Assembly: GCF_006345805.1 (NCBI RefSeq)
Contig: NC_043005.1
Span: forward strand, 104,346,001-104,410,000
DNA from: Octopus sinensis
Lineage: Eukaryota
Reading direction: 5' to 3'
Length of the DNA stretch: 64,000 nt
Shown here piece by piece: positions 8,867 through 57,283 of the stretch (its first letter is position 1; each line of letters starts with the position of its first letter). The position numbers and the translations under genes were made by a program. Below the pieces are notes generated by a model. That model made no database searches, was not told the origin of the DNA, and saw nothing but the letters and a program-made list of their open reading frames with translations.

Positions 8867-9054
8867 GGTGTGTTGTATATATATAATGTACTGTTCCGTT
8901 ATGGTAAGATCAACAAAAAAGTACTCTATCTGGTGAGAGATAAATATTATCTAATAAAAGCAATATATGTTTTTATGTGCTACTATTAGTTTCATCTGCT
9001 GAGAGCATACCAGACAGTATTTTTATTAACAAATCTGGAGTCCTAGCATAATCA

Positions 9055-9102
9055 TCAGGCACTGCCCATATGGCATAACGAAGCCATATGGGCAGTGCCT
9101 GA
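9055..9102. repeat. Perfect 20-bp inverted repeat with 8-nt loop
   Basis: TCAGGCACTGCCCATATGGC - ATAACGAA - GCCATATGGGCAGTGCCTGA. Confidence 0.9.
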
Positions 9103-9146
9103 GGATTGTTGTAGGACACCAGTATTAAAAATTACTGTTATATATA

Positions 9147-9734: not shown

Positions 9735-10004
9735 TTAATAATGTGTGTATCTGCCTGTCTGTCTGTCTGTCTGTCTCTCTCTCTGTATATATATATATAT
9801 ATATATATAACGTTGAAAAGAGTGCTCAACACCGCATTGGTGGATATATAATTTCTTTATTTGTGAATTAAGGCTACCATTGGTTTTATGTGAAGACGAG
9901 TAGGAAAATATCCTAGTATCTTATAGAGGCGAACAACTTTATCCATGTGATCGGCTTGAAAAATTGTTAAGAGACTAGAATATTTTCCAACTCTTCTTAA
10001 ACTC

Positions 10005-10265
10005 TTCTTGTGTGGCATGGTGCAGAGTCCAGTTGCCAGATATAGGGTCTTCCAGCAGCCACCCTCTTGTCCCAGGCAACACTTCCTCCACCAAGCACTT
10101 GATGTAGGCCTCCGTGTTGAGTCTGAGGCTGTGTAGGAAGATGAAAGGAGGCATAACGTCGCCATCACTAATAATCACTCCAAACACTATGGTGTTGCCT
10201 GGATGCTTAATTTTTATCACTCTCGGTACAAGCCAACGGTTGTTCTGTGTATTAACCATCTGATG
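10005..10265 (-). pseudogene. Tc1/mariner (maT/DD37D-like) transposase DDE-region fragment, frameshifted
   Basis: QMVNTQNNRWL...KHPGNTIVFGVIISDGDVMPPFIF...LNTEAYIKCL, continuing in a shifted frame as VAAGRPYIWQLDSAPCHT (second catalytic D motif). Confidence 0.8.
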
Positions 10266-10455
10266 CTGGCAGATTGTGATGCCACAGCAAGACACACACA
10301 AGGCATTCCATTCATTTCCCAGCACAAAGAGGTAAGCCCCGTTCTATGCTCGGGTCATGGCATAGAACGTATAATTGAGTATAATAGAGTTAAAATTTAT
10401 AATTCTTAAAGAAGAATACTATTATATTCTTCTTAAGAATATTCTGAACATATCA

Positions 10456-11146
10456 CGGGAAAATCTGACACTGTTTCAGGCTGATCCAGCTGCTTTCCTT
10501 AAACGTTTCCTAACCCAGCATGAGTATTGATTTCATCACTTAGAGCCAGATACAAAGAGACAATTCATGCAGAGGAAACACTCTTCTCCAAAGAAGGCCG
10601 AAGTCGTTTCATCTGCAGGGAAGGTGATGGCCTCAGTTTTGGAGATGCAACAGGTATCGTGTTTATTGACTATCTTCAAAAGAGTCACAACTCGAATGGA
10701 AAGTATTATACCAATTTGCTGAAGCAGTTACAAAAGGCTATCAAGACCCAATACCCAGATAAATAGATGAAAAATGTTTTGTTTCATCAGGACAAGGCAC
10801 CAGCGCACAAGCTCTTGGTTTCAATGGCTGCTGTGCGTGACTGCAGCTTTGAACTGGTTGATCACTCTCTCCATTCTCCAATTCGGCTCCATCTAATTAT
10901 CATAAATTCCAACGTAAAGAAAAACACTTGACAGGAAACCAGTATCGCAGTGATGCTGACATCATATCTACTGTTGATGACTTCTATGACCAACAGGATG
11001 AAAGCTTCTTCACCAATGGGATCCAAGCGCTGCAACACCGATGGAAGAAATGCGTGGACCGCAAGGTGTTCTGTGTTGAAAAATAAGTAATTCGGTCACA
11101 TACCATGAAAATATCTACGTTAGTCTATGAACGTTTTAACCCCTTG
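10456..11146 (+). mobile_element. 5'-truncated mariner (DD34D) element with decayed transposase
   Basis: FLKRFLTQHEY*FHHLEPDTKRQ..SAGKVMASV / DATGIVFIDYLQK..NGKYYTNLLKQL..LFHQDKAPAHK..LAPSNY..GIQALQHRWKKCVDRK..VEK*. Multiple stops and frameshifts; the 3' end runs to TA at 11147-11148. Confidence 0.9.
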
Positions 11147-11433: not shown

Positions 11434-11593
11434 CAGTGAGTTAAAAGAAGTAGAGAGTACAGTATAAAGCTCGTCCACCTTCAGATTTCACCCCGTGCTA
11501 TCCAGTAGTAGTATCATACGTACATCATGGTTTGTGTTCGGACATCTGTCGTGTGTGAATATACAACCGAAAAACGTTTTTCAATTGTAAATC

Positions 11594-11762
<169 letters not shown>

Positions 11763-12417: not shown

Positions 12418-12467
12418 GGAGAGAGAGAGAGAGAGGAGAGAGAGATAGATAGATAGATAGATAGATT

Positions 12468-12532
<65 letters not shown>

Positions 12533-12549
12533 GTAGGTAGGTCGATAGG

Positions 12550-12602
<53 letters not shown>

Positions 12603-13208
12603 TTACAATTGAAAAACTTCTTTCGGATATTTATTCACACACACACACACATTTTTGTATTTTATATATATGTGTATGTGTCGATTTTAAACCTGTTTAA
12701 AATCTTCCACCCCTATCCTATTCCGTTCTCTCACCTCTCCTCTATATCTCTAAAACAATTTATTCTTATCTTCTCCACTCTACAATCAAATATATATGAA
12801 ATATATTTTACTAACTGAATCTTGACTTTCAGTTTTCTGGCTAAAGGAATAAATGAATTCTTGGAGAAAAAAATCAGACGGGAGCTACTAAAACAGCCTC
12901 GTTCTGGATTTGCTTTAGTCTGTTCTTTCATTTACAAATTTCGTACCGACTTTTTATAACTCTGAGACCCATAAACAGGATGTGGAGTTTCCTGGTCTCC
13001 AACAGGTATCCTTGCCAAAGCAGATGACTCCTGAATTTGCCTATCAATTTTCTAAAATTTGGAAACAATATAAATTTGTTACTATGGAAGTGTTACAATA
13101 TACAAAGTGTAGTAATATACTCACTCTTTTACAAAACATTTGAGTTCCAGTTTTATCTGACACGTGATAAATTGGTCAACTATATATACATGCATACATA
13201 CATACACA

Positions 13209-17544: not shown

Positions 17545-17587
17545 CTATGTGCTTGTGTGCGTGTGTGTGTATACTTATATATATATC

Positions 17588-18001
17588 GTTTATCTTTTAC
17601 TTGTTTCAGTCATTAGATTGCGGCCATGCTAGGGCAGTGCTTTGAATTTTTACTCGAATGATTCAATCGACCTCAGTACTTCTTTTTAAAGCCTGGTACT
17701 TATTCTATCTGTCTATTTTATCGAAGCGCTGGTTTACGGGGACGCAATCACACTAACACCGGTGGTCAAGTTGTGATGGGGTACAAACACAGACAGAAAG
17801 ACACACACGCATAGATACATATACATATATAAATATGTCGGGCTCTTTTCAGTTTCCGTTAACCAAATTTATTCACAAGGCTTTTTTTTTTTTTTGAGGC
17901 TATAGTAGAAGACACTTACTCAAGGTGCCATGCAGTGGGACTGAACACAGAACCATGTGGTTGGGAAGCAAGCTTCTTATTACACAGGCATGCCTGCGCC
18001 T
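17588..18001 (-). mobile_element. SINE family A, full length, diverged
   Basis: Head AGGCGCAGGCATG..., GGTTCTGTGTTCAGTCCCACTGC; 3' end ...GACTGAAACAAGTAAAAGATA. Confidence 0.85.
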
Positions 18002-19333
18002 ATATGTGTGTGAAAAGGCTTTTCGTGTTTGTACTGTATGGTTTTAGTACTCTATATGTATAATTCTTGCTCTTACTTATTGTACAGCCGTATGGCATTT
18101 TCTATTATGTATAACGTCATTTTGTCCTGTCCTCGCATACATTCGTCAGCTTTTTCCTGTAGCTCTCTGCTCTGGTGCTCCCGGTTGATAACAGTGGTCT
18201 TGCTTTAAATAGCGTGAAACCACTATGACGTCTCAGATACCAACAGATGAGAAATGTTCCTGGTATCGTGTTTTCGTTTCTCTTTTCTGTCCATTATGGT
18301 TTCGCCCAGTTTTCTTAAATTTTCCCCCTTCACTGTATAACTTTTGGTATGTATGTATGTATGTATGTATGTATGTATGTATGTATGTATCTAAATCTAT
18401 ATCTATATCTATATATATATATAACGCCAATGTTAAAGTGGACATTCCATTTTTATTCATTTTTATGATTCCGAACAACACAATATTAAAAAATAATTTT
18501 TTCCATGGTGCGATTAATCAGAAGAGCATTTTGAACTCTCCAAGATTATTAGGAGTAACGAACTCTCTTCAAGCTATATCAATGGCAGTGTTGGATGAGG
18601 GATTAAGTTTATTACCCCAAACCAGTCCGTCTGTCAGACTTGAGATTACGGTACGTGCTCCACACTGAGCTCGAACCCGAAAGAATGTAAATACAAAGCA
18701 AACTTCTCAAACATACATATATATTTATACTCATGTGCGTGTGTATGCATATATGCATGTATGCATGCATCAGTGTATATAAATGTGTGTGTGTGTGAGT
18801 GTGTGTAATTAAAAAACACAAGTTCCGGTGTCAATGCTTCAACGAAGCCGTCTACAAACAAACGCATCACATACAGGACACATTACAATATTTCCATTAA
18901 TAACCATTTTACAAATCATCACACATTTTATAACAGCCATTAGCACCAAACTTTAGAAAACAATAAAAAAAAACCCAGAGTGGTGGAAGATCACAGACAA
19001 CATCCGTCAATCGTATGGTTGGATATCCTGATAAGGGGGTCACGAGACCATGAAACGTCGATAAGATGGACATGGTGAAATTTATATACAATGACCCAAT
19101 AGGAATAAAGAAATCAATATAAAGACCGAAAGACTAAATAAATTTTACAATAAAATAAAAAGAAAAAAATTCCGTGAAACTATAGATGCGTAAAATTGTG
19201 ATTTCTTAATGTCTATGCCTCCCTTTCTTTGGATATTAGGTACATATGTATGCATGCGTGTACGTATAGACTTAATTATGTGTGTGAATACACACACACA
19301 CACACACACACATACACACACACACACACACAC

Positions 19334-21525: not shown

Positions 21526-21549
21526 CACACACACATCTATATATATATT

Positions 21550-21612
<63 letters not shown>

Positions 21613-21621
21613 ACACATGTA

Positions 21622-22254
21622 TATGGTGTAATATGATAATTTATGTAAAGGTATCCCATAGAAACTCAAGTATGTTAAACGTGGAGAAGTGAAGCTGTTA
21701 AAATTTTAAAAGAATTTTAATACATGCATTCGATCGTTTCAAATAGCGATATTAACATGTAAATAGCATGGTAAAATAATTAATCACATAACCCAGTTCT
21801 CCTCAGTGCAAGAAGTATACAACAGGAATTATTATTACAGAAGACTTGATGAAGGAAATAGCAGATAACAGATTCGGATATGCATATTTTATCCTTTAGT
21901 TTATACACAGCTAGACTAAACAACATTCTTTAGTATGCTCTCAATTTTTCATAAAGATAAAATACGTATATCCGAATTTGTTATCTGCTATTTCCTTCAT
22001 CAAGTCTTCTGTAATAATAATATTTCCTGTTGTATACTTCTTGCACTGAGGAGAACAGTGATTTGTAATTTATCTAATTTAATTAAATTAATTTTAATTA
22101 TTCTACCATGTTATTTACATGTTAATATCACTTTTTGAAACGATCGTATGCATGTATGAAAATTCTTTTAAATTTTAACATCTCTTCTCCATTTTTAACA
22201 TACTTGTTGAGTTTCTATGAAATACCTTTCCATAAATTCTCATAACACACCATA
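21622..22254. repeat. Long imperfect inverted repeat (foldback/MITE-like), arms ~270-300 bp, spacer ~60 bp
   Basis: Left arm 21622-21893 matches the reverse complement of 21956-22254, including perfect blocks GTTCTCCTCAGTGCAAGAAGTATACAACAGGAA and TATTATTACAGAAGACTTGATGAAGGAAATAGCAGATAACA. Confidence 0.9.
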
Positions 22255-22401
22255 AACGTAATAATTTCGTATTCGCAAAAATCTTGCGCCAGTAAGCTAC
22301 CAGCAAAATATGAAGAATCTTTGTTAGAAATCACCCTTTGGAACCATCCAAAGTAAGGGAAGAAATATAATTCAACGTCTTCACATATATACACACATGT
22401 T

Positions 22402-22626
22402 TCTTTATCTCTTTTATCTCTTTTACTTGTTTCAGTCATTTGACTGCGGCCATGCTGGAGCACCGCCTTTAGTCGAGCAACTCGACCCCGGGACTTATTC
22501 TTTGTAAGCTCAGTACTTATTCTATCGGTCTCTTTTGCCAAACCGCTAGGTGACGGGGACATAAACACACTAGCATCGGTTGTCAAGCAATGCTAGTGGG
22601 ACAAACACAGACACACAAACACACAT

Positions 22627-22698
<72 letters not shown>

Positions 22699-22860
22699 TA
22701 CGACAGGCTTCTTTCAGTTTCCGTCTACCAAATCCACTCACAAGGCTTTGGTGGGCCCGAGCTATTGTATCTCTCAGGCATACACATTGCACAAGGTGCC
22801 ACGCAGTGGGACTGAACCCGGAACCATGTGGTTGGTATGCAAGCTACTTACCACAGCCAC
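22402..22860 (-). mobile_element. SINE family A, near full length
   Basis: A box TGGCTGTGGTAAG, B box GGTTCAGTCCC, internal CA/TA microsatellite, and a tail of AAAAGAGATA-type repeats. Confidence 0.9.
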
Positions 22861-25948: not shown

Positions 25949-26002
25949 ATTCCAGTTTTAACGTAGTAGATCACTCTTGATGTGCTTCATCGTATACACT
26001 AC

Positions 26003-26672
26003 CTTGCTGGATTCTTCCTTTTCGCCTTCGGCCCAGTGCGTCCATGCTGCCAACAAAGCACGCGGAGTTCTGTTTTTGATTCGACGGTCATTCGGAATGC
26101 TCACAGCAGCCATATTCCTACCGCTCTATGTCACGTTGGTGAGACCCATATTGGAGTACGGGATTAAAGCCTCTTCTCCTTATCTCCTCAAAGACATACA
26201 TCATCTCGAAAGAGTCCAAAAGCTGGCTACCCGCATGGTTCTTGGTCTCAAGCATTTGTCTTATGAAGAAAGGCTGAAGACGCTCGACCTTTATTTTCTA
26301 GAAAAACGACGACGCCGCGGTGATCTCATTCTTGCTCACATCATAAGCGGAAAGTGTAACCTCTCGAAAGAGCTGTTCTTCACTCTTGCTCCAGAGCGTC
26401 GGCTGCGGGGTCATTCCGAAAAGCTCTATCTGCGACGATTTCATCTCAATCGAAGGAGAGGGGCTTTCTCCGTCCGGGTTGCGGATCCGTGGAATAAGCT
26501 GCCGGACGAGATAGTGAAGATGCCGACGACCACTCGGTTCAAGGTCTCTCTTGACCAGAAATGGCCTGAACTCTTTGCATGAACGCCCTCCCTGTACATA
26601 ACTCCATGTCCCCCTACATGGCCTTGCTTTTTGCTTTTTGAGCCAAATTAACTTAACTTAACTAACTAACTA
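26003..26672 (+). mobile_element. 5'-truncated CR1-clade LINE (ORF2 C-terminus, 3' UTR and TAAC tail)
   Basis: ORF 25977-26582 contains LPLYVTLVRPILEY, LERVQKLATRMV.GLKHLSYEERLK.LDL..LEKRRRRGDLI, LRGHS.KL and FS.RV.DPWNKLP, typical post-RT CR1/L2 motifs. Tail is (TAAC/TTAAC)n. Confidence 0.9.
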
Positions 26673-30940: not shown

Positions 30941-31350
30941 CTCTTTTACTCTTTTACTCTTTTACTTGTTTCAGTCATTTGACTGCGGCCATGCTGGAGC
31001 ACCGCCTTTAGTCGAGCAAATCGACCCTTATTCTTTGTAAGCCCAGTACTTATTCTATCGGTTTCTTTTGCCGAACCGCTAAGTGACGGGGACGTAAACA
31101 CACCAGCATCGGTTGTCAAGCAATGCTAGAGGGACAAACACAGACACACAAACATATACACACACATACATATATATACATATATACGACAGGCTTCTTT
31201 CAGTTTCCGTCTACCAAATCGACTCACAAGGCTTTGGTCGGCCCGAGGCTATAGTAGAAGATACTTGCCCAAGATGCCACGCAGTGGGACTGAACCCGGA
31301 ACCATGTGGTTGGTATGCAAGCTACTTACCACACAGCCACTCCTGCGCCT
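30941..31350 (-). mobile_element. SINE family A, full length, young-looking
   Basis: Head AGGCGCAGGAGTGGCTGTGTGGTAAGTAGCTTGC, B box GGTTCAGTCCC, (GTAAAAGA)n tail. Confidence 0.92.
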
Positions 31351-31371
31351 ATGACAAGTAGAATTAAGTGT

Positions 31372-31560: not shown

Positions 31561-34500
31561 AATGTATGTTTTAAAACGCCTACAGTAGAAATAAACCCAT
31601 GACTCCCTGTTAAAGGTGCAATTCTGTCATTAGTTTCTACACTTACATACATCTCTCTGCTAATATTTTCAAGTATGAGCAGGGAGACATAGACAGAGAA
31701 GCCCGGACATTCCCGCAAATATATATATGTAAGACACCCATCACTCAGTGGGACATCAATGGTGAAGCTCAAATTCAAGTTCAGAAATGCATTCTTTGAA
31801 TGATGGCTGTATATACGTACTGCGTTGAGTGGGGTTTTGTCAACCAAATATTACACGCTGTATCCTATAATCTCAATCAGAGATTACAAGATGTAATTGA
31901 CAACTGGATCAACACGATATGCAGACATGATTAAAAATGACTTTTTCTCTGATAATATGAAACCTATTTCTGACAGGTACGAAAACTTAGGTGATGTGGA
32001 AGAACCTACCCTGTACATTGAAATTCCAAAAGCTGATTTGAATGTATAAGTTATGTATAGTTATGCACTTATATACGAATACACATATGGACATTTATGC
32101 ACACACTTATACAAACTCACGAGCACACACACACACACACACACATGCACATACACACACTCATACATGCGCGCACGCACACTCAAACGCGCATGCGCAC
32201 ACACTATTTTTTCATACATTTTCTTTCGAGTTATGTCTCCTAATCTCTATTTTATTACGTTTATTTCGTTCAACTTCGTCGTGGACTTTTTGTACGTATG
32301 TATGTATTTATGTGGGTGTATATACGGGTATGTATGCATGTGTATGTGGGTGTATATACGGGTATGTATGCATGTGTATGACTATATGTATACGCATGTG
32401 TGTATAATCATATATGTATGTGTATCTTTACGTACGTGTGTGTGTATCTTTACACATACATACACTTATACAGACACACACGCATACTCACACACAAACG
32501 CTCTCACAGACGAATTTATATATGTAATTGGGCATATACCCGTATGTACTTTTATAATACAACAAAGTGGATATTTGTCCCCATAACTAAAAGAGACATG
32601 TACTATTATTGGAGTTTGGCAGACACATAAACTTCACATCAAAAGTAAATAAGACAGACTATGTGGAATTAATAGGGAAACATCCAACCTTTATTTCCTT
32701 GTTCAAAAGTATATAACTTCATCTCAAATTAATGGAGGTAGACTAGTATTTAATTTAGAATCAGCGCACTATTTAAAAAGACAAGTTTACAATATTTGAC
32801 GTTGCTCAAATACAGTTGATCATGTCACCGATCATAGTTGTTTACATGAGTGTTTTTACTCTAATTTCATTTAGTTTTAAGTGAATATAATCCCTTCAGT
32901 GATTTGAGGTTTATACGGGTAATTTTTTTAAGTACACTGGTATCTGACTTTCGTTCAGGTAAATACTTATGAATCCTGTCCTAACTCAAATTCTAATTAC
33001 CATATTTATAAAGGAGTTTATACGCGGTCGCTAGATTTGCAGTTAAATATCATTCAAAATAACATTTTAATGTCTTTTTTTAAAATATACATCGAATAAT
33101 GTCTTGGAAATACTGTTTAATAAAAAAAAATCAGAATCGTCTTGGAACACTTTTTATCATGTCAACTCAGTTGTTACTTACCTTGGGATCAATAAAGACA
33201 GCATTCTTTTAGATGTGACCTTAAGTTTAACACTTAGACTATCTTGCATCATAAGATCATGTGGCTTATTAGAGTTCTACAATAGGTTCTATGAGGTCCA
33301 TTGAACCAAAATATATTTATGTCCTTTTTTTTTTATCTACTTTGAATCGTTCGTCCTTTAAAAGTTCTCATGGTAGGTATGCTGATAAGTCCAATGGGAA
33401 GTTACATTTTGTCTGAAACCTCTTAAGAAGGGTTCTGAAAATGGACTGAAGACGACTCTTAACCTAATTCTGTGAATTCATTAACTTCAAGTGCAACATA
33501 GTGATTGAGAAAATGCTTAAAATTATGGAATCTCTTCAAAGAGTATCCCCCCCCCAAAAAAAAAAAATTGCAGTTCTATAAATAAATCTAAGATGGGTAA
33601 GTAACGTGAAATGTATTGTTCATGAAAACAACAATCTGATTGCAGCAGAAAACTTTATCAATGGCATTGAGTTCGCATCATTTAAATATGTTCTTCGACA
33701 ATTAACCTAACCCGTTTGAAATGTGTACCACATATACTTCAAGTATCTCGTTTTATGAGAGATTAGGTGCTGACATTCATGTTTTTTTTTGCACTCAAAG
33801 ACCCTGGACTCTTTTACTGATCTTCAAACGAACGATATTAACGTAAGAACACTGAACTACAAGAAGTACATTGTAGCTAATTCCGATTCAATGCAGCCAA
33901 TTTCACTTCACTTACTCCAATATACCATGCGAAAAGTTACAGAACATCCCGTTTTCATCTAAAACTGTGGCCTTCTTTAAAGAAAACGATATTATCAAAC
34001 TTTGTAGTCTATTTACTTTACAAATACTAAAAAAAAAAAAAGGAATAATGACTGAGTATATGTATTACTGCATATTTATTTGATTTGTGATATCGCAGGA
34101 TTACTTCCAGTAAAAACTGCAATCTGTCCCAAGCAAAATATGAAACACTACATGAATTTCAAATATAACTCAATGTATGATAAATAGAATAATTTATTTT
34201 TGTTAGAGAGGTGAATATAGAACCTAGAAAAATCTATAGTGGAAGGATTTGATTTGATATTCATGCAAATAAAATGCTCCGAAGATAAAATCGAAAGAGA
34301 GTCGTAAGCTTCATTGGTCAAGAATTTAGTTCTCTAGCTAGCGATCGTTTGGTATTGACTTTTTAAAAAGCTGTAATTTGTTAAAGAGCGAGCTGAGATT
34401 GCGTACCTTTCAAGCTTATAGAAGGGATATCAAACTACTACGGCAACCCGAAGAGAAAGGTGATGTAAAACTTGTGACCTTTTCTAATGGTATCAAGATG

Positions 34501-37163: not shown

Positions 37164-37229
<66 letters not shown>

Positions 37230-37265
37230 ATCTATCTATCTACCTCTCTCTCCCTCCCTCTCTCC

Positions 37266-37344
<79 letters not shown>

Positions 37345-37358
37345 TATATATATATACA

Positions 37359-37618
37359 TATCTATACAATAATATGTTACATTACTCGATAGTCAAGATA
37401 AAGCTCTCAGATGCCGAAGTGGAAATCCACAACACCATCTCTTCGGTTATAGCCAGATAACCGAAGAGATGGTGTTGTGGATTTCCACTTCGGCATCTGA
37501 AACTCAGAGTTTTATCTTGACTATCGAGTAATGTAACATATTATTGTATAGATAAATTTCCTCTATTTACATAATATTGAGGTATCTTTCTTTCTGTTGT
37601 TATCTTACCGTTTTACCA

Positions 37619-37620
<2 letters not shown>
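37359..37620. mobile_element. Palindromic element, copy 1 (196-bp hairpin plus ~65-bp tail)
   Basis: Arms 37359-37450 and 37457-37554, loop AGCCAG; they differ by one substitution and a 6-nt indel. Tail AATTTCCTCTATTTACATAATATTGAGGT. Microsatellites on both sides. Confidence 0.85.
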
Positions 37621-37664
<44 letters not shown>

Positions 37665-37698
37665 ATATACATATAAATATATATACATATATATATAC

Positions 37699-37763
<65 letters not shown>

Positions 37764-37781
37764 ATATATATATATATATAT

Positions 37782-37908
37782 AACCACATGGTTCCGGGTT
37801 CAGTCCCACTGCGTAGCACCTTGGGCAAGTGTCTTCTGCTATAGCCCCGGGCCGACCAAAGCCTTGTGAGTGGATTTGGTACATGGAAACTGAAAGAAGC
37901 CATTCGTA
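37782..37908 (+). mobile_element. SINE family A, partial
   Basis: AACCACATGGTTCCGGGTTCAGTCCCACTGCG...GAAACTGAAAGAAGCC. Confidence 0.85.
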
Positions 37909-37999
37909 TACACACACACACTCACACAGAGTAAAAGGCATTTTGTCCAGCATATTAACTATTATGCAAGCTCGCCTAATAATAATAATAATCCTTTCT

Positions 38000-38435
38000 T
38001 CTTATAAAGCACATGGCTTGAAATTTGTGGGGAGGGAATAAGTCGATTACATCAGCCCCAGTGCTCTACTGGTAATTATTTGATCGACCCCGAAAGAATG
38101 AAAGGTAAAAACGACCTCGGCAGGTTTCGAACCCAGAACGTATGGACTGACGAAATGCCACTAAGCATCTTGCCTGGCTTGGTAACGATTCTGCCAGGTC
38201 ACTGCCAAATAATTTCAAATTATGGCACAAGGCCAGCAATTTTGAGGGAGTGGGTAAATCGATTACATCGACCCCGGTGTTGACCTGGTATTATTTTATC
38301 GTACCTGAAAGGATGAAAGGCAAGGTCGACTTCGATGGAATTTGAACTCAGAACGTAAAGCCGGACGAAATGCCGCTAAGCATTTTGTCCAGCATGTTAA
38401 CAATTCTGCCAGCTCTCATGGTATTGATAATAATG

Positions 38436-38508
<73 letters not shown>

Positions 38509-38540
38509 TAATAATGATAATAATAATAATAATAATAATA

Positions 38541-38578
<38 letters not shown>

Positions 38579-38579
38579 A

Positions 38580-38639
<60 letters not shown>

Positions 38640-38872
38640 TCAAATTTTGGCACAGAGCTAGCAATTTTGGGAGAGGAGGTAAGTCGATTACTTCGACCCT
38701 AGTGTTCAACTGGTACATATCGAACTCGCTAGAATGAAAATATTTGCATTGTTGCCAGATCAAATACTTTCCAAATGTCGTGTTGAAATTTGACGTCGGC
38801 CACTTTCGACAGGCGAAATACTGCTAAGCATTTCGTCCGGCGTGTTTAACGAGTCTGCCAGCTCGCCACCTT
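38000..38872 (-). mobile_element. Cluster of three family B SINEs (about 38000-38208, 38215-38420, 38638-38872) around an AAT/GAT/ATT microsatellite
   Basis: Each shows the reverse complement of GAGCTGGCAGA..CGTTA/GCTTAGC and the GTCGATTAC(A/T)TC core. Confidence 0.8.
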
Positions 38873-42943: not shown

Positions 42944-43105
42944 GGAGTGGCTGTGTAGTAAGTACCTTCCTTACCAACCGCATGGTTCTAGATTCAGTCC
43001 CACTGCGTGGCACCTTGGGCGAGTGTTTTCTACTATAGCCTCGGGCCGACCAAAGCCTTGTGAGTGGATTTGGTAGATAGAAACTGAAAAGAGACCGTCG
43101 TGTAT

Positions 43106-43191
<86 letters not shown>

Positions 43192-43401
43192 CATATGTAC
43201 ATGTATATATATGTATATATGTGTGTGTTCGTGTGGTGTGTTTGTGTTCCCCCACCATCGCTTAACAACAGCGGTTCGGCAAAACAGACAGATAGAATAA
43301 GTACTAGGTTTACAAAGAATAAGTCTTGGGGTCGATTTATTCGGCTAAAGGCGGTGCTCCAGTATGGCCGCAATAGAATGACTGAAACAAATAAAAGAAT
43401 A
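42944..43401 (+). mobile_element. SINE family A, full length
   Basis: GGAGTGGCTGTGTAGTAAG head, TTCAGTCCCACTGCGTGGCACCTTGGGC, internal TA run, ends ACTGAAACAAATAAAAGAATAA. Confidence 0.88.
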
Positions 43402-44020
43402 ATTGTGGTAACAGTTGTGGCTCTGTGGTTGTAGTACAAGGGATAGCGGCGGCGACTGTAGTTTCAAGAATAGCTTTAGCAGTGGTGAATGTTATACAGA
43501 TTAATGCATTAGTTGTTGTGTGGTACCAACAACTATATTCTCTGCTGGAGAGTGAAGTGATTGTAGCATTATATTTCTTTTGTGGCTGCTGCATACAAGA
43601 GAGTCCTGCTTGAGTAGACCTTAATACCAAAGACCATGCTCATCTAATCTCTTCGTGGAGTGTAATTAGGAGTACAATGCCCACTTTATTTTTATGGCAA
43701 TTCAGCGTGGTTTGCAGCAGACTTGGCTACACTTTGCGATATGCCTGTCAAGAAATGATGCTCAAAGACAGAATTCTTCTGATCTTTGGATAACCCATGG
43801 CTGCACAACAACAACAGCAACAACGATAACAACGACAATCATATATACTGTTAACACGAAAATCCTTGATAGATACAGTAACAACATCAATGACAATATG
43901 AGAGAAGACCCTATTGTAATATCGCAAGAAGTTTATGGCAAAGCTGTCCTTGTTTATGTGCACGACGCAATCTAATTAGCGAACTAATCACTTTTAATCT
44001 CTAATTAGATAAGCAAGTGC

Positions 44021-46862: not shown

Positions 46863-49800
46863 TTATCCATCTATCTATCTATCTGTGTGTGTAAATAATC
46901 TTAACATACACTTTTAATAGAATATAGGTTATATTTGTGTGTGTAACTCTGTGTGTGTGTGCGCGCGTATGTGAATGTGTGCAAATATGTTGTATATTTA
47001 TATATGTATATATATATTACATAGGTAATTTAATATGTATTGAAGTGGATAACTTAACAGATAAATGAATTGATGTTTCTTGCAGTCAAAAGTTTCTTAT
47101 AAAGTTAATGTTTAGCATCATTTTCTATAAATTTAACCGACCCAGGGGCGTAAATACGGGTGGATGGAACACCGTATTTTCGTGGCATCTCAGAAAATCA
47201 TGTGTTCATTACTAATAACATATCAGTTAGGATAGGTGGATGGATGGTGCTGCAAGTAAATTTTTTAAAAAATAACCATCACTTTTCAATTAAACACTAT
47301 AATTGAAATTTAATTAGTTGGAAATATTTCATCATAATTAACCCAAATTTCATGTCTTTAAACAATTTATTGTGTATTTTGGCTTGTAATGACTCAGAAT
47401 TAATAAATCCACTTGAGACTGAATCATTGTCTCACAATCATAGCTTATGTTTAGATTTAAAAAAAAATTTTATCGATACAATATTAGTTACATTGATATC
47501 ATATGTCAATTCGTTGGTTTTAGTAATATTGCTAACGACATCTTTATAAATGGTAATATTAAACGTAGAACAAACATCGTAAGTCGAAGTATGATATCTT
47601 TAATAAAATGATTACAAGCTGGTTGGATGACTGAAAGCTCTGTTAATCCGATGGTAACACGCTGAGACGATATAGATAGGGGAATATCAGGCAATGCAGA
47701 GAGAAAGGCTACATCCTATGTTGTTCGAAATCATGAAGAGTAATTTGATAATTACCTTCCGTCGCATCACAGATTATAGCTACATTGTAGTGAGATCATT
47801 TATCTCACGAAAATTTAATCGGCGTCAACACCGTCACCTTTTAATACACATTTGATCAATACCGCCACCATTACTATCACCAACTCCAACTTCATCACCA
47901 CAGCTTCACTAACGTTGCACCACAATCATAAACACTTACACCTCAGTCATCACTAGCACCAGTATAATATCATCACCATCAGAAGCAGCAGCACCAGTAG
48001 CAGTAGCAGCACCACCACCACCACCACTACCACCACCACCACTACCACCACCACCACTACCACCACCACCACTACCACCACCGGCACCAATGTCATCACC
48101 ACCAACAGAAGCAATAATCAGACATTAAAAGAACACAAAGATGAGAAACTATTTCACTAAACTGATTATTCAATAAGTAAATTAAAAACATTTGTCCGAC
48201 TGTTCTTTCCTGAAGATAGCAATGAATCAACTTAAAAAGTAAGTTCCGGTTCCGTCACAGACGTTTAATATCTTTAACTTTCATAAACACAAAAATAGAG
48301 TACTAGACACGTGACATACTTTTGTAAGGCGCAAAAGGAAAAAGATAAAAGCAAAAAACAATTAATGCTATATCGAATATTGCGTAAGATGTTAGTGGCT
48401 TCATATTTACAAAAGATTACGAGCAAAGAAAAACTGAATAATTCCCTATTAGACTTACATTATGTTTCACTATTGCTGCGCATGTATGCATGCAGTCGTC
48501 TAATGTAAATAAATAATTTTCAAAATACTTGACTTTCGTCAGGTTAACCAACTAGAGCATACACCAAAGTTTTGAACAAGTTAAGCAACGAAATAAATTA
48601 CAATAATTTTATATATTTCAAAGGGTTAAGTTGGCATATATCTAATGTTAAGAAATACGAATATGTATTCTGTGATTTGTCTATATTTCTCTGAACTGGG
48701 ATATGTTCAAGTCATTCGGTTTTCCGACTATATTTTAGTCACATACAACTATATTATAATCAGTGTTTTGAACGAAAGTTTTCTAAACTAAACTTCTACT
48801 AAAAATGTAGTTTATATTATAAGAAACGTTTCACACACGCAGGGGTTGGTGCGCACGCACACACACACACACACACACACAATCACAAACACGCACGCAC
48901 ACGCATACAGACGCCCACGCATGCATACACACATAAATGTACGTACACACGCAAAGACACATTCACGCACGCACATACAAACACTGGATTATATACAACC
49001 ACATATACACAAGCATGCACGCACACATAAACACACTTAAATTAAAATTACTTTTCATTAATTATTATTTGCAATTAAGTTATGAAACAAAAACAATGGT
49101 TAAAATATATGTATTCAGAAGATTGAATCCTTGTTGTATAAGTCATAAGTAAAGTGAGTAAATAGAATTACATAAATAGGTTTGCGAGTCGATAACTAAA
49201 GTTTATATGGAAAAAGATTCAGCTGGCTCTATAATTCACAAAGAATTTAAATGATTTTAACAGCTTATAGATGTAAAAAAAAAAGAAAAAAATGCCAGAC
49301 AGTGGTGTGGCTATTCATATTGGCAATTCAGCTTTTTCTTTTTTTTTTATGTGAACAGCTTATGCTTGAAAGACAAATGATTACATTTGTAGAAAATTAA
49401 TACGTATATGCAATACATACGCACGCGCATTCATGCTTTCACACGTGAACATACACAAACGAAAGATACACACAGACATACGTATAAGTATATATGATTT
49501 CTTATATACTTTTCTTGGTTTAGGTACTGGCAAATACTACACTATAGTAAATCTAACGAGAAATTACTGTATATTAATATAAATTCCAAATTTCTAATAA
49601 TTTGTAGAAACTTACTTAATCTTAGTAAGCGCATATCCTATTTATTTTTCTTTTTTGACGAAGGATTATTTAGCCATGCTGCTAATTATTATAACCACGC
49701 AAGTCAAAGACAGAATAAATAATATATAGAAAGAACATCACTAAAATTCAAAACAGAAAAACAGAAAACGAAATATTAACATGGTATAATCTCCCATTTG

Positions 49801-51428: not shown

Positions 51429-51515
<87 letters not shown>

Positions 51516-51540
51516 ATATCTATCTATCTATCTATCTATA

Positions 51541-51608
<68 letters not shown>

Positions 51609-51611
51609 ATA

Positions 51612-51642
<31 letters not shown>

Positions 51643-51669
51643 ATCTATCTATCTATATATATATATATA

Positions 51670-51741
<72 letters not shown>

Positions 51742-51746
<5 letters not shown>

Positions 51747-51975
51747 GTAAATGTAATATGTGACAATTATTCGGTAGCCATGATAAAACTCCGATGTTCG
51801 GATGTCGGGGTGGAATTTTTCATAGCATTATTTCCGATGGTCGGATAACCGACATCCGAAACTCGGAGTTTTATCATGGCTACCGAATAATTGTCACATA
51901 TTACATTTACAGATAAATTCCTCTGTTTACCTAATATCGAGGTTTCGTTCATTCTCTTGTTGTCTTACCATTTCT
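51742..51975. mobile_element. Palindromic element, copy 2
   Basis: Perfect 53-bp arms 51742-51794 and 51863-51915, near-perfect 14-bp inner extension, tail AATTCCTCTGTTTACCTAATATCGAGGT. Preceded by (TATC)/(TA)n. Confidence 0.85.
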
Positions 51976-52082
51976 ATCTCTCTCTATCTATCTATTTATG
52001 TATGTATGTATGTATGTAAGTATGTATGTATGTATGATGTATGTATGTATGTAGTATGTATGTATGTATGTATGTATGTATG

Positions 52083-52181
<99 letters not shown>

Positions 52182-52829
52182 GTATGTATATACACATCGT
52201 CATCATCATCTGATCATCATGTTTTTAATTTCAACTGTCCATTTGCTTTAGCCATCTGTATATTCCCTTATAATATTGCCTGAGCTCGTCGCTTAGATGC
52301 TTTGTATGGAATAAGTATCTCCATTCTATTTGTATGATATTTAATACCATTATGTACACACACGCTCGCGCGCGCATACACACTTGCACACGCCCGCACA
52401 CACTCACAAACACACACGCACGCATAAGAATAAACGAGCGTATTTCAATACCCCATTTCCACAATTCTTTCCTACATTATTTCCGTTGCCATCTCTCTCT
52501 CTCTCTTTCCCTCTCCCTCTCTCATCTCCTACCATTTCTCTCATCTGTACTCTATTAACTCTTCCTCATATTATTCTTTTACATCTAATTTAATTTTCCT
52601 TTTAGTGTTGCTATTCTTTGTGTTTTCTTTATATTTTATTTTTGTCAAACCTACTTTCTCCCGCTCATAAATACAAAAGCAGAACTTAGAATATATATGA
52701 ACACACACACACACATACCCCCCACACATATATAGGTATGAATGTACATGCGTGTGTATATATATGTATATATGTATCAATATATATATATATATATTAT
52801 ATATATATATTATATATATATATATATAT

Positions 52830-55674: not shown

Positions 55675-57283
55675 GAACGGCAACAGCAGGGTATCAGTTT
55701 AGAGATGGTAAAGGAAAACTTAACCATTTGCTCTACATGGATGGTCTGAAGCTTTTCATTAAGAATAAAAAATGAGATAGAATGTTATGAGGCTCCACAA
55801 CAGGACATTGTACGCTTAACAATGGAAGACGTAATTACACAGGTACCGGAACGGCCAAATTGGAAAGCAACAGGACCAGACGGAATCCAAGGCTACTGGC
55901 TCAAGTGGTTTAGGTCAACACAAGCGAATTGCTTTGCAGTTAAATAATTGCCAACAGAGTGGTGCAGTTCTGTAAAGGATTGCAGAGGGAAAGACAACAT
56001 TGTTCATGAAAGATCGGTCAAAGGTCGGGTGAGGTTGGGAATCACCAACCCATTGCTTGTCTTAACCTATTATAGAAAGTGTTAACAGGCATTCCCACAC
56101 AGAAAATATATACGATCCTTGCCGAAAACAATCTACTTCCAGTAGGACAAAAGGGATGCAGAAAAGGATTCCGTTTAGAAATAGTAACGGAAAAAATTAA
56201 TCCTTTGCTCTACATGGATGATCTGAAGCTTTTTAGTAAGAATGAAGCGATAGATTCCTTAGGACAGACTGTAAGACTCTTCAGCAAAGATATAGGTACG
56301 GAATTTGGCATAGATAGGTGTGCAATATCAGTCATGGGAAGGGAACAGGTAGTCAACAACGAAGGCATCCAATTATCAGATGGTCAGACATTAAAATCAT
56401 CGAAAGGAGGAGAGAATTATAAGTATCTAGGAATATTAGAATCTGATAGAGTACTAACTATAGAAATGAAAACGAAAGTTGAAAAGGAGTCCATGAGAAG
56501 AGTGACGAAGCTGATGAAGTCAAAGCTCAATGGTCCGAATCAAGTGAAGGTTGTCAATACTTGAGAAGTATCATTACTTAGATACTCAGCAACTTTTGTA
56601 GGTTGGACAAAAACTGAATTAGCAAGCTAGACAGAAGAACTACGAAGGAATTCAATATGATCACGGGCTGGAATAACAAGATTATACTTACCAAGAAAGA
56701 AAGGCGGAAGAGGGTCAATATCAGTAGAAGACTCCGCGGAGTTAGCTAGAATAGATATAGACTCCAATGAAGTTTATTAAAGGTTGCTAGTTTACTAAAG
56801 AAAGTTTACTAGAGGCTGCAATACAGAGGAAGACCAAAAACCTAAAACAAAGTTTAAAATCAGAAATAAGAACAGAAGTTATCTGACTGCTGCATATAGT
56901 AGTAGTGAAACATGTTTATGGTTGCAAAGAGGAAAGCTGAAAGGGGAGACAGCATTAAGGACTAATTGGATAAAAGTCAAGATAGACAAAAACCAAGTAG
57001 ATTCCCAATGTAGGTTATTGCAAATCAAAAGAGGAAAGTGTTACTCATGTAGTAAATGAATGTAGCATTCTGGCACAGAAAGAATACAAGAAAAGACATG
57101 ACAACCTAGGGAGAGTAATCCACTGGAAGTTATGTAGAAAACTAGGATCTGAACATAACTGGGAAGTAAGAAATATACGATGTCGTGGGACTTCATCATT
57201 CAGATTGATAGAGTAATAGAAGCTAGAAGGCCTGGTTTAGTAGTAGTAGATAAAGAGAATAGAAAGTGCCAGATAATTGACTA
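55675..57283 (+). mobile_element. Decayed, rearranged R4/Dong-clade LINE (RT, CCHC knuckle, RLE endonuclease)
   Basis: PNWKATGPDGIQGYWLK, HQPIACLNLL, QKGCRKG, LLYMDDLKLF, DIGTEFGIDRC, YKYLGILE, KLNGPN; C-x2-C..H..C (CRL/CKSKEESVTHVVNEC, frameshifted); RHDNLGRVIHWKLC; VVWDFIIQIDRVIEARRPGLVVVD..CQIID. Many stops and frameshifts. Confidence 0.9.

What the first reader, a model, noticed from the sequence alone, without database searches (positions are those of the whole stretch)
37359..37620. Microsatellite-anchored palindromic element whose arms evolve in concert within each copy
Seen: this element and 51742-51975 share one layout, (TATC/TA)n - long inverted repeat - conserved ~65-bp tail - microsatellite. 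The copies differ at six or more arm positions plus indels (e.g. GATAGTCAAGATAAA vs GGTAGCCATGATAAA; GTTAC vs GTGAC), and each difference is mirrored in the opposite arm of the same copy. The arms are 53/53 identical in copy 2 and differ by one substitution plus a 6-nt indel in copy 1. There is no TSD, ORF or tRNA head, and the palindrome is off-centre, so it is not a standard TIR MITE. Inference: one arm is templated from the other (foldback self-priming or template switching at insertion, or arm-to-arm conversion). It could be an unclassified non-autonomous family; Helentron/DINE-like and Penelope inverted-end derivatives are candidate relatives.
Basis: partly seen in the sequence, partly recalled or inferred. 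Interest (0 to 1): 0.75.

Follow-up and report, generated by a model that had tools for sequence, protein, structure and literature searches.

The report
Octopus hairpin repeat in TA microsatellites
Two diverged copies of a roughly 260-bp hairpin-plus-tail repeat sit inside (TA)n microsatellites of an octopus-like genome, and their matching arms are most simply explained by the head-to-head, self-templated insertions that Penelope-like retroelements are known to make, so this is probably an ordinary mobile-element footprint.

Summary
Loci 37359-37618 and 51742-51973 are the only two copies in the window. Each is a long palindrome (arms 92-98 nt and 70 nt) followed on one side by a conserved tail of about 57-60 nt, and each is embedded in (TA)n/(TATC)n arrays.

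In a four-way arm alignment, 13 differences between the copies are mirrored in the partner arm and none is arm-specific. Arm identity is 97-98% within a copy and 79-81% between copies. The two arms of a copy therefore share a more recent ancestor than the two copies do.

The window is from an octopus or a close relative, not a shrimp or insect.

The layout matches published Penelope-like element (PLE) insertions on four points:
- head-to-head inverted copies;
- a palindromic junction;
- an extension at one end only;
- a (TA)n target.

PLEs are abundant in octopus. If both arms are copied from one template at insertion, mirrored differences follow automatically and no ongoing concerted evolution is needed.

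I could not test membership. No further copies, orthologous sites or RT/GIY-YIG-linked relatives could be retrieved. The rivals are a Helentron/HINE-like or foldback DNA element, and in-situ arm conversion.

Verdict: probably a new member of a known kind, of modest interest.

The parts
37164..37361 (.). Copy 1 left-flank composite microsatellite: (ATCT)n, (TC)n, then (TA)n. The last 16 nt (37346-37361) are one half of a candidate target-site duplication.
   Evidence: TRF; sequence; 16-mer match.
37359..37450 (+). Copy 1 left arm, an inverted copy of the right arm. It carries a private G/A substitution and a 6-nt deletion at about 37403-37413.
   Evidence: 91 matches, 1 mismatch, 6 gap columns against the right arm.
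37451..37456 (.). Copy 1 centre of symmetry: the 6-nt loop or junction AGCCAG.
37457..37554 (+). Copy 1 right arm. It contains the local hairpin TCTGA-AAC-TCAGA at 37496-37508.
37555..37618 (+). Copy 1 one-sided tail. It is conserved with copy 2 up to CTTACCGTTTT (37604-37614) and has a weak CCTC...GAGG stem at 37560-37582.
37619..37782 (.). Copy 1 right-flank (TA)n array with periodic CA interruptions. Its first 16 nt repeat the left-flank 16-mer.
51429..51746 (.). Copy 2 left-flank (TATC)n/(TA)n array, which runs into the TATCTG start of the left arm.
51742..51808 (+). Copy 2 left arm, paired part.
51809..51848 (+). Copy 2 unpaired inner segment. It is a continuation of the left arm whose partner is missing from the right arm; the gap lies between CCGAC direct repeats. 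Only 52% identical to copy 1's inner arm.
51849..51915 (+). Copy 2 right arm. It contains the local hairpin TCCGA-AAC-TCGGA at 51855-51867, a compensatory version of the copy 1 hairpin.
51916..51973 (+). Copy 2 one-sided tail, ending CTTACCATTT (51964-51973).
51976..52189 (.). Copy 2 right-flank microsatellites: TATC/TC remnants, then (TATG)n, (TATC)n and (TA)n.

Best explanation
Each locus is the product of one insertion by a retroelement of the Penelope-like (PLE) type into a (TA)n-rich microsatellite. It may be a very short non-autonomous partner or the bare 3'-terminal (pLTR-like) part of a PLE.

Proposed steps:
1. The element's RNA, roughly 100 nt of body plus a tail of about 60 nt, is reverse-transcribed from the nicked AT-rich target.
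2. A second, inverted copy of the body is made in the same event. [quoted passage not shown]
3. The result is two head-to-head arms, a short palindromic junction, and the tail at one outer end only.

Because both arms copy one template, they are identical at birth. The 13 mirrored differences are simply the divergence (about 20%) between the two source subfamilies. The few private changes are decay after insertion: one substitution and a 6-nt deletion in copy 1, and a dinucleotide swap and a loss of about 36 nt between CCGAC repeats in copy 2.

Shown here: the anatomy, the site pattern and the microsatellite context. Inferred: the RNA intermediate, the PLE enzyme and the order of events.
For: **1. 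Arms coalesce within each copy.** 13 mirrored and 0 positional differences; 97-98% identity within a copy against 79-81% between copies.

**2. The centre of symmetry is at a homologous position in both copies.** Copy 1 reads TCGG-TTAT-AGCCAG-ATAA-CCGA and copy 2 reads TCGG-ATAA-CCGA. This is expected if the copy turns round at a fixed template end.

**3. Both copies lie in (TA)n/(TATC)n.** (TA)n is only 3% of the window. The left and right arrays of copy 1 share the same (TA)nCA motif, as if one array had been split.

**4. Published PLE anatomy matches.**
- Frequent 5' truncation, an inverted 5'-truncated copy abutting the unit, a 30-40-bp tail often at one end only, and a (TA)n preference in Naiads (PMC8557442).
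- Palindromes at inverted junctions, interpreted as self-priming; head-to-head is the commonest arrangement; a 31-bp tail on one inverted pLTR; TSDs of 8-10 bp or none (PMC3846280).
- A PLE protein that cleaves and extends both strands of AT-rich DNA and starts reverse transcription at two internal sites whose spacing is the tail (PMC11167929).

**5. PLEs are present in the host group.** Penelope is among the most abundant families in octopus, with octopus-specific expansions (PMC8967140). The window shares LINE and SINE families at 84-92% identity with Octopus vulgaris.

**6. The divergence gradient fits a retroelement.** The outer arm and tail are 80-84% conserved and the inner part only 52%. 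Retroelement cis-signals lie near the start of reverse transcription.

**7. A local stem inside each arm keeps pairing through a double change.** TCTGA/TCAGA becomes TCCGA/TCGGA. This suggests the single arm is a functional unit.
Against: - No RT or GIY-YIG reading frame, and no longer relative sharing this 3' end, could be examined. The window has none.
- The tail is 57-60 nt, not 30-40.
- There is no direct pLTR or tandem copy at either locus.
- No hammerhead ribozyme was found (and none among the 150 listed matches). This is acceptable only for HHR-less clades such as Naiad, and Naiads are said to be ancient remnants in cephalopods, whereas these arms are only 1-4% diverged.
- Both insertions have arms of about 100 nt. 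That fits a short fixed template, or a palindromic unit that moves as such, better than random 5' truncation.
- There are only two copies. Everything about the enzyme is by analogy.
Confidence: 0.5

Rival explanations
1. A non-autonomous DNA element moves as a complete palindrome-plus-tail unit. It could be Helentron/HINE-like, a foldback element, or an atypical MITE. The long hairpin would be a cis-acting structure of a single-stranded intermediate. Mirrored differences would then arise in the source lineage, through selection for pairing or through repair of hairpin mismatches at each round.
For: - The geometry resembles HINEs. The 5' inverted repeat starts at the element end and the 3' one ends 57-60 nt from the 3' end; HINEs show 38-60. 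The 3' end is T-rich and there is a small conserved stem in the tail.
- The centre of symmetry and the arm length are shared by both copies.
- The paired arms are better conserved than the unpaired inner segment, 80% against 52%.
- The boundaries read A|TC...|T, as in rolling-circle elements.
Against: - HINE subterminal repeats are 11-15 bp, not 70-98 nt. Their targets are TT or T-rich and their microsatellite is internal. Here the flanks are (TA)n, and nothing upstream of the SSRs is shared.
- There is no CTRR end.
- Rolling-circle elements are described as a bivalve expansion rather than a cephalopod feature.
- This explanation needs an extra homogenising mechanism that the retroelement model does not.
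- A possible 16-nt duplication flanks copy 1.
Confidence: 0.22
2. The two copies are old insertions from one burst, and their arms are kept alike in place. Arm-to-arm gene conversion would act through cruciform or hairpin formation followed by mismatch repair. This would be true concerted evolution.
For: - The arms are far more alike within a copy than between copies.
- The arms and the tail differ between copies by a similar amount, as expected for old copies diverging in place, because conversion does not change the mean substitution rate.
Against: - Other short-spacer palindromes in the same window have decayed. At 21619-22257 the arms are 92% identical with 36 gap columns, and at 9014-9138 they are 87.5% identical. 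There is therefore no general homogenising process.
- A 6-nt indel in copy 1 and a loss of about 36 nt in copy 2 remain uncorrected.
- Conversion alone does not explain why the unpaired inner segment is much more diverged (52%) than the rest.
Confidence: 0.08
3. The hairpins are structured RNA genes, either miRNA or hairpin-siRNA precursors, whose stems are kept by compensatory selection.
For: The hairpins are very stable. There are sub-threshold hits to assorted miRNA models on both strands.
Against: - No hit reaches a gathering score, and the hits are to unrelated families on both strands. That is generic hairpin similarity.
- Perfect stems of 70-98 nt are unlike animal miRNA precursors.
- A survey of mollusc small RNAs found no evidence of a dedicated endogenous siRNA pathway.
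- The conserved one-sided tail and the microsatellite context point to a mobile element.
Confidence: 0.04
4. The palindromes are assembly or read artefacts, such as foldback chimeras.
For: Palindromes next to long microsatellites are hard to assemble.
Against: - Two loci 14 kb apart carry the same architecture with about 20% sequence divergence.
- Each has its own private indels, a shared tail and different flanks.
- An artefact would not reproduce a diverged homologous structure twice.
Confidence: 0.02

Closest known systems
Penelope-like element insertions with inverted pLTRs and a one-sided 'tail' (Penelope/Poseidon, Neptune, Naiad clades)
   Same: - Head-to-head inverted copies with a short palindromic junction.
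- An extension present at only one outer end.
- Insertion into AT-rich or (TA)n DNA.
- A target duplication that is short, variable or undetectable.
- Arms produced in one event, so identical at birth.
- PLEs are abundant in octopus.
   Different: - Only about 260 bp, with no ORF and no direct pLTR.
- The tail is about 57-60 nt instead of 30-40.
- No hammerhead ribozyme was detected.
- Both copies have nearly the same arm length.
- Linkage to an RT/GIY-YIG element was not tested.
Helentron-associated interspersed elements (HINE / DINE-1 / Cg_HINE)
   Same: - Asymmetric layout, with the 3' inverted repeat lying tens of bases inside the 3' end.
- A small stem and a T-rich terminus follow it.
- Association with microsatellites, and known from molluscs.
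   Different: - HINE subterminal repeats are 11-15 bp.
- The HINE microsatellite lies inside the element, between left and right modules.
- HINE targets are TT or T-rich.
- Here the whole body is a palindrome, the SSRs are outside it, the flanks are (TA)n, and no left module is shared.
Near-palindromic MITEs such as human MADE1 (Tc1/mariner-derived)
   Same: Short, non-coding and almost entirely hairpin; a TA-type target is possible (listing, PMC1784062; otherwise my own knowledge).
   Different: MADE1-type elements are symmetric and the inverted repeats are terminal. Here a conserved tail of about 60 nt lies outside the palindrome on one side only, so the true ends are not inverted repeats.
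LINE-1 'twin priming' inversions
   Same: Both involve priming from the second target strand during target-primed reverse transcription, which gives an inverted segment (my own knowledge).
   Different: In twin priming the inverted and direct parts come from adjacent regions of the RNA, so no palindrome results. Here both arms copy the same region.

Membership tests
Penelope-like elements (PLE) | Full-length relatives encode a telomerase-like RT plus a GIY-YIG endonuclease and share the 3' end with the short copies. | not testable with these tools
   No octopus genome could be searched by DNA. The window has no GIY-YIG motif and no PLE-like frame. Collection scans gave nothing usable.
Penelope-like elements (PLE) | An inverted (head-to-head) truncated copy abuts the unit, with a palindrome at the junction. 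| tested here: met
   Arms of 92-98 nt and 70 nt with centres AGCCAG and ATAA. Feature as described.
Penelope-like elements (PLE) | [quoted passage not shown] | tested here: inconclusive
   A conserved tail is present at one end only in both copies, but it is about 57-60 nt long.
Penelope-like elements (PLE) | Insertion bias for AT-rich DNA or (TA)n microsatellites. | tested here: met
   Both copies are flanked by (TA)n/(TATC)n. (TA)n is 3% of the window.
Penelope-like elements (PLE) | A hammerhead ribozyme in the pLTR. This applies to canonical clades; it is absent from Naiad and Chlamys. | tested here: not met
   No hammerhead match at E <= 10 in either element. None at gathering score in the window.
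Penelope-like elements (PLE) | Partial tandem arrangement producing direct pseudo-LTRs. | tested here: not met
   No direct repeat of the arm or the tail at either locus. Inverted-only arrangements are also described in the literature.
Helentron / HINE | Subterminal inverted repeats of 11-15 bp, lying 2-4 nt from the 5' end and 38-60 nt from the 3' end. | tested here: inconclusive
   The positions fit, since the right arm ends 57-60 nt from the 3' end. The repeat is 70-98 nt long and fills the whole body.
Helentron / HINE | A short palindrome 8-35 bp from the 3' terminus. | tested here: inconclusive
   A CCTC...GAGG stem of 4 bp plus imperfect pairs is conserved in both copies, about 31 nt from the end. 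It appears in the minimum-energy fold of copy 1 only.
Helentron / HINE | Insertion into TT or T-rich sites, with a microsatellite inside the element between left and right modules. | tested here: not met
   The flanks are (TA)n/(TATC)n. There is no shared sequence upstream of the SSRs.
Canonical Helitron | 5' TC, 3' CTRR, a 16-20-nt hairpin about 11 bp from the 3' end, and insertion between A and T. | tested here: not met
   A|TC at the 5' side and T after the 3' side are compatible. The 3' ends read ...ACCAA and ...CATTTC, which are not CTRR, and there is no such hairpin.
TIR MITE (Tc1/mariner-type) | Inverted repeats at the true termini, flanked by a TA duplication. | tested here: not met
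   The conserved tail (83% identical between copies) lies outside the inverted repeat on one side, so the termini are not inverted repeats.
miRNA / known structured RNA families (Rfam) | A match to a curated covariance model at its gathering score. | tested here: not met
   only sub-threshold, strand-symmetric hits to unrelated miRNA models.

The most novel reading that the evidence does not exclude
The unit could be a previously unrecognised class of short non-autonomous element in cephalopods that always propagates as a hairpin and re-templates one arm from the other at every round. That would happen either by obligate snap-back synthesis of a mini Penelope-type RNA that lacks a ribozyme, or by hairpin repair in a single-stranded DNA intermediate. 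Arm identity would then be a heritable, mechanism-enforced property, and the element would also seed or target (TA)n/(TATC)n microsatellites.
Probability: 0.15. Interest if true: 0.6.

Novelty: new member of a known kind. Interest (0 to 1): 0.3.

Why it matters
If the PLE reading is right, these loci are compact natural records of the least understood step of Penelope-type retrotransposition, in which a second, inverted copy is made and a tail is left on one side. They occur in a genome where PLEs and microsatellites are both abundant. A census of such mini-insertions could map reverse-transcription start sites, turn-round points and target choice without an in vitro system. It would also show how far mobile elements that home to (TA)n contribute to the microsatellite-rich structure of cephalopod genomes. 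For annotation, it is a warning that palindromes with co-varying arms need not mean concerted evolution or selection on an RNA structure.

Tried and rejected
**Searches for more copies.**
- blastn at word size 7-9 and an nhmmer profile of the arms, against the window and 20 kb of O. vulgaris, found only the four arms.
- Degenerate DNA patterns against viral, metagenome and prokaryote-genome collections gave only chance hits or nothing.
- A concatenated 12-frame translation of both copies against the protein collection, hoping for spurious ORFs from octopus contigs, gave no hit.

**Attempts to obtain more octopus DNA.**
- Searching with a window LINE ORF gave one O. vulgaris locus, L006, with no copy of the element.
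- A pooled query of transposon peptides gave no octopus-level hits.
- The window's own LINE ORF is not on record.

**Ideas rejected.**
- Shrimp origin, my first guess from the SSR richness. The shared LINE and SINE families with O. vulgaris rule it out.
- A larger composite element with the SSR inside it. The two loci share nothing beyond the SSRs.
- tRNA-derived SINE: no tRNA-like sequence.
- Hammerhead or any other Rfam family.
- CpG hypermutability as the cause of parallel changes. By my reading of the alignment, only one of the eleven mirrored substitutions is of CpG type.
- A conserved fold of the single arm beyond one 5-bp stem. The folds are not consistent between copies.
- Possible third copies at 47455-47494 and 34161-34197. 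These are AT-rich chance matches.
- Supplementary PLE consensus sequences are not held.

Full report
**What is there.**
Each is a long inverted repeat followed on the right by a conserved non-palindromic tail, with microsatellites on both sides.
- Copy 1: left arm 37359-37450, centre AGCCAG (37451-37456), right arm 37457-37554, tail to about 37614/37618.
- Copy 2: left arm 51742-51808, an unpaired 40-nt segment at 51809-51848, right arm 51849-51915, tail to 51973.

As single strands they fold at -104 and -78.9 kcal/mol, with z-scores of -25 and -18.

No other copy exists in the window or in 20 kb of Octopus vulgaris DNA, by blastn or by an nhmmer profile.

**The key observation holds.**
I aligned four sequences: the left arm and the reverse-complemented right arm of each copy. 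Over 67 columns:
- 47 are invariant.
- 13 separate the copies and are mirrored in the partner arm (11 substitutions and two single-base indels).
- None groups the arms by position.
- The remaining 7 columns come from about four events private to one arm. These are a G/A change and a 6-nt deletion in copy 1's left arm, and a TG/GT swap in copy 2.

Arm identity is 58/59 and 65/67 within copies and 79-81% between them. The tail is 83% identical.

Only one mirrored substitution is of CpG type, so parallel hypermutation cannot explain the pattern. The data require that the two arms of a copy share a more recent ancestor than the two copies do. They do not say whether that is because the arms are made together or are corrected later.

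**Further anatomy.**
1. The centre of symmetry lies at a homologous position in both copies. Copy 1 reads TCGG-TTAT-AGCCAG-ATAA-CCGA and copy 2 reads TCGG-ATAA-CCGA.
2. Copy 2's 'loop' is the inner part of its left arm. The matching part of the right arm is missing, and the gap is bounded by CCGAC direct repeats.
3. This inner segment is only 52% identical to copy 1 (17 of 33 positions). The outer arms are about 80% identical and the tail 83%.
4. Inside each arm a 5-bp local stem is preserved by a double change, TCTGA...TCAGA in copy 1 and TCCGA...TCGGA in copy 2. This is a post hoc hint that the single arm is a functional unit. No larger monomer fold is shared.

**Context.**
The window is not from a shrimp, as its SSR richness first suggested to me.
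- A CR1-like ORF at 25977-26582 is 86% identical in protein, and 91% in DNA, to a locus on O. vulgaris chromosome OX597823.1 (GCA_951406725.2).
- Several SINE-like repeats match that locus at 84-92%.

Short-period repeats cover 15.4% of the window. (TA)n makes up 3.0% in 17 arrays, and (TATC)n 2% in 7 arrays.

Both copies are bounded by such arrays within a few bases. A rough post hoc estimate for all four ends is about 3e-7. Nothing beyond the SSRs is shared between the loci, so the SSRs are the target or context and not an internal module.

In copy 1 the last 16 nt of the left array equal the first 16 nt of the right array (ATATATATATACATAT). That 16-mer occurs at 4 of 149 positions in the right array. 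This is weak evidence, about 0.03-0.05, for a target duplication, or at least for one array having been split. Copy 2 shows no such repeat.

**Most likely mechanism.**
The combination seen here is head-to-head inverted copies, a short palindromic junction, an extension at one outer end only, a (TA)n target, and an uncertain target duplication. This is the published signature of Penelope-like element insertions.
- Craig et al. describe frequent 5' truncation, an inverted truncated copy abutting the unit, a 30-40-bp tail often at one end, and (TA)n as the preferred Naiad target.
- Arkhipova et al. describe palindromes at inverted junctions and interpret them as self-priming. They report head-to-head as the commonest arrangement, a 31-bp tail on one inverted pLTR, and duplications of 8-10 bp or none.
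- Frangieh et al. show that a PLE protein cleaves and extends both strands of AT-rich DNA. It starts reverse transcription at two internal sites whose spacing corresponds to the tail.
- Penelope is among the most abundant repeat families in octopus, with octopus-specific expansions.

Under this model both arms are copied from one template in one event. Mirrored differences between insertions from two subfamilies then follow automatically. The shared symmetry centre is the fixed 5' end of a short template. The few private changes are decay after insertion. The better conservation towards the outer end and tail is the usual retroelement pattern. I put this at about 0.5.

**Why not higher.**
- Membership could not be tested. 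No RT/GIY-YIG-linked relative, no further copy and no orthologous site could be retrieved.
- The tail is longer than described for PLEs.
- There is no direct pLTR.
- No hammerhead ribozyme was found (and none among the 150 listed matches).
- Naiads, the ribozyme-less clade that targets (TA)n, are reported as old remnants in cephalopods, whereas these arms differ by only 1-4%.

**Rivals.**
- *A DNA element that moves as a hairpin unit (Helentron/HINE-like or foldback), 0.22.* It shares the asymmetric geometry, with the 3' repeat 57-60 nt from the end against 38-60 in HINEs. However, HINE repeats are 11-15 bp, their microsatellite is internal and their targets are T-rich. Rolling-circle elements are not prominent in cephalopods. 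The model also needs an added homogenising step.
- *In-situ arm-to-arm conversion, 0.08.* Other palindromes in the same window have decayed. The arms at 21619-22257 are 92% identical with 36 gap columns, and those at 9014-9138 are 87.5% identical. Uncorrected indels also remain in both copies.
- *A structured RNA gene, 0.04.* Nothing reaches an Rfam threshold. The stems are far longer and more perfect than miRNA precursors. A survey of mollusc small RNAs found no evidence of a dedicated endogenous siRNA pathway.
- *An assembly artefact, 0.02.* It would not yield two diverged homologous structures.

**Verdict.**
'Concerted evolution' is not demonstrated, and the layout is a known one. I classify it as a new member of a known kind, with modest interest (0.3). 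The decisive test is a genome-wide census of the monomer together with orthologous-site comparisons.

Noticed in passing
window 21619-22257 (flanks 21538-21624 and 22385-22395): A second, unrelated palindromic element of about 640 bp. Its arms are about 280-306 nt, 92% identical with 36 gap columns, and the spacer is 53 nt. It starts directly after a (CA)n(TA)n array. The 11-mer ATATATACACA occurs at its left flank and again about 130 nt beyond its right arm, so it may be another 'palindrome plus one-sided tail in a microsatellite' insertion. No other copy and no Rfam match.
   Followed up: partly
window 9014-9138: A palindrome of about 125 bp, with arms about 60 nt long and 87.5% identical, beginning ACAGTA. 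It looks like a small Tc1-type MITE. Single copy in the window.
   Followed up: partly
window 9860-11095: Frameshifted remnants of a mariner-type transposase on both strands. Motifs include DSAPCHT, HQDKAPAH and QALQHRW.
   Followed up: no
window 25962-26657: A CR1-like LINE 3' fragment. It is 86% identical in protein and 91% in DNA to a gene model annotated on O. vulgaris chromosome OX597823.1. In the collection that model carries a name taken from a bird genome (llap_6084), which looks like a mislabelled record.
   Followed up: partly
window 55750-57213: Pieces of a LINE reverse transcriptase (YMDD motif) in several frames. The best database relatives are only 45-63% identical.
   Followed up: partly
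window about 114-308, 17576-18003, 22413-22860, 30944-31357, 37783-37909, 42944-43402: Many copies of two adjacent SINE-like repeats, also present in the O. vulgaris locus L006 at 77-92% identity. One copy lies just beyond the (TA)n array to the right of copy 1. ARAGORN finds no intact tRNA head.
   Followed up: partly
window 11551-11759 and 12436-12642: Two long (TATC)n/(GATA)n-type arrays in inverted orientation, about 700 bp apart. They form a microsatellite-based inverted repeat about 200 nt long and 90% complementary.
   Followed up: no
window 38425-38640: A compound trinucleotide array, (ATA/ATG/ATT)n, that reads as long poly-Asn, poly-Asp and poly-Tyr runs in one frame. It produces spurious long ORFs.
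   Followed up: no
window 37619-37782: The (TA)n array to the right of copy 1 has a higher-order period of about 20 nt, (TA)8CA repeated. This suggests growth by duplication of a larger unit rather than by dinucleotide slippage alone.
   Followed up: no
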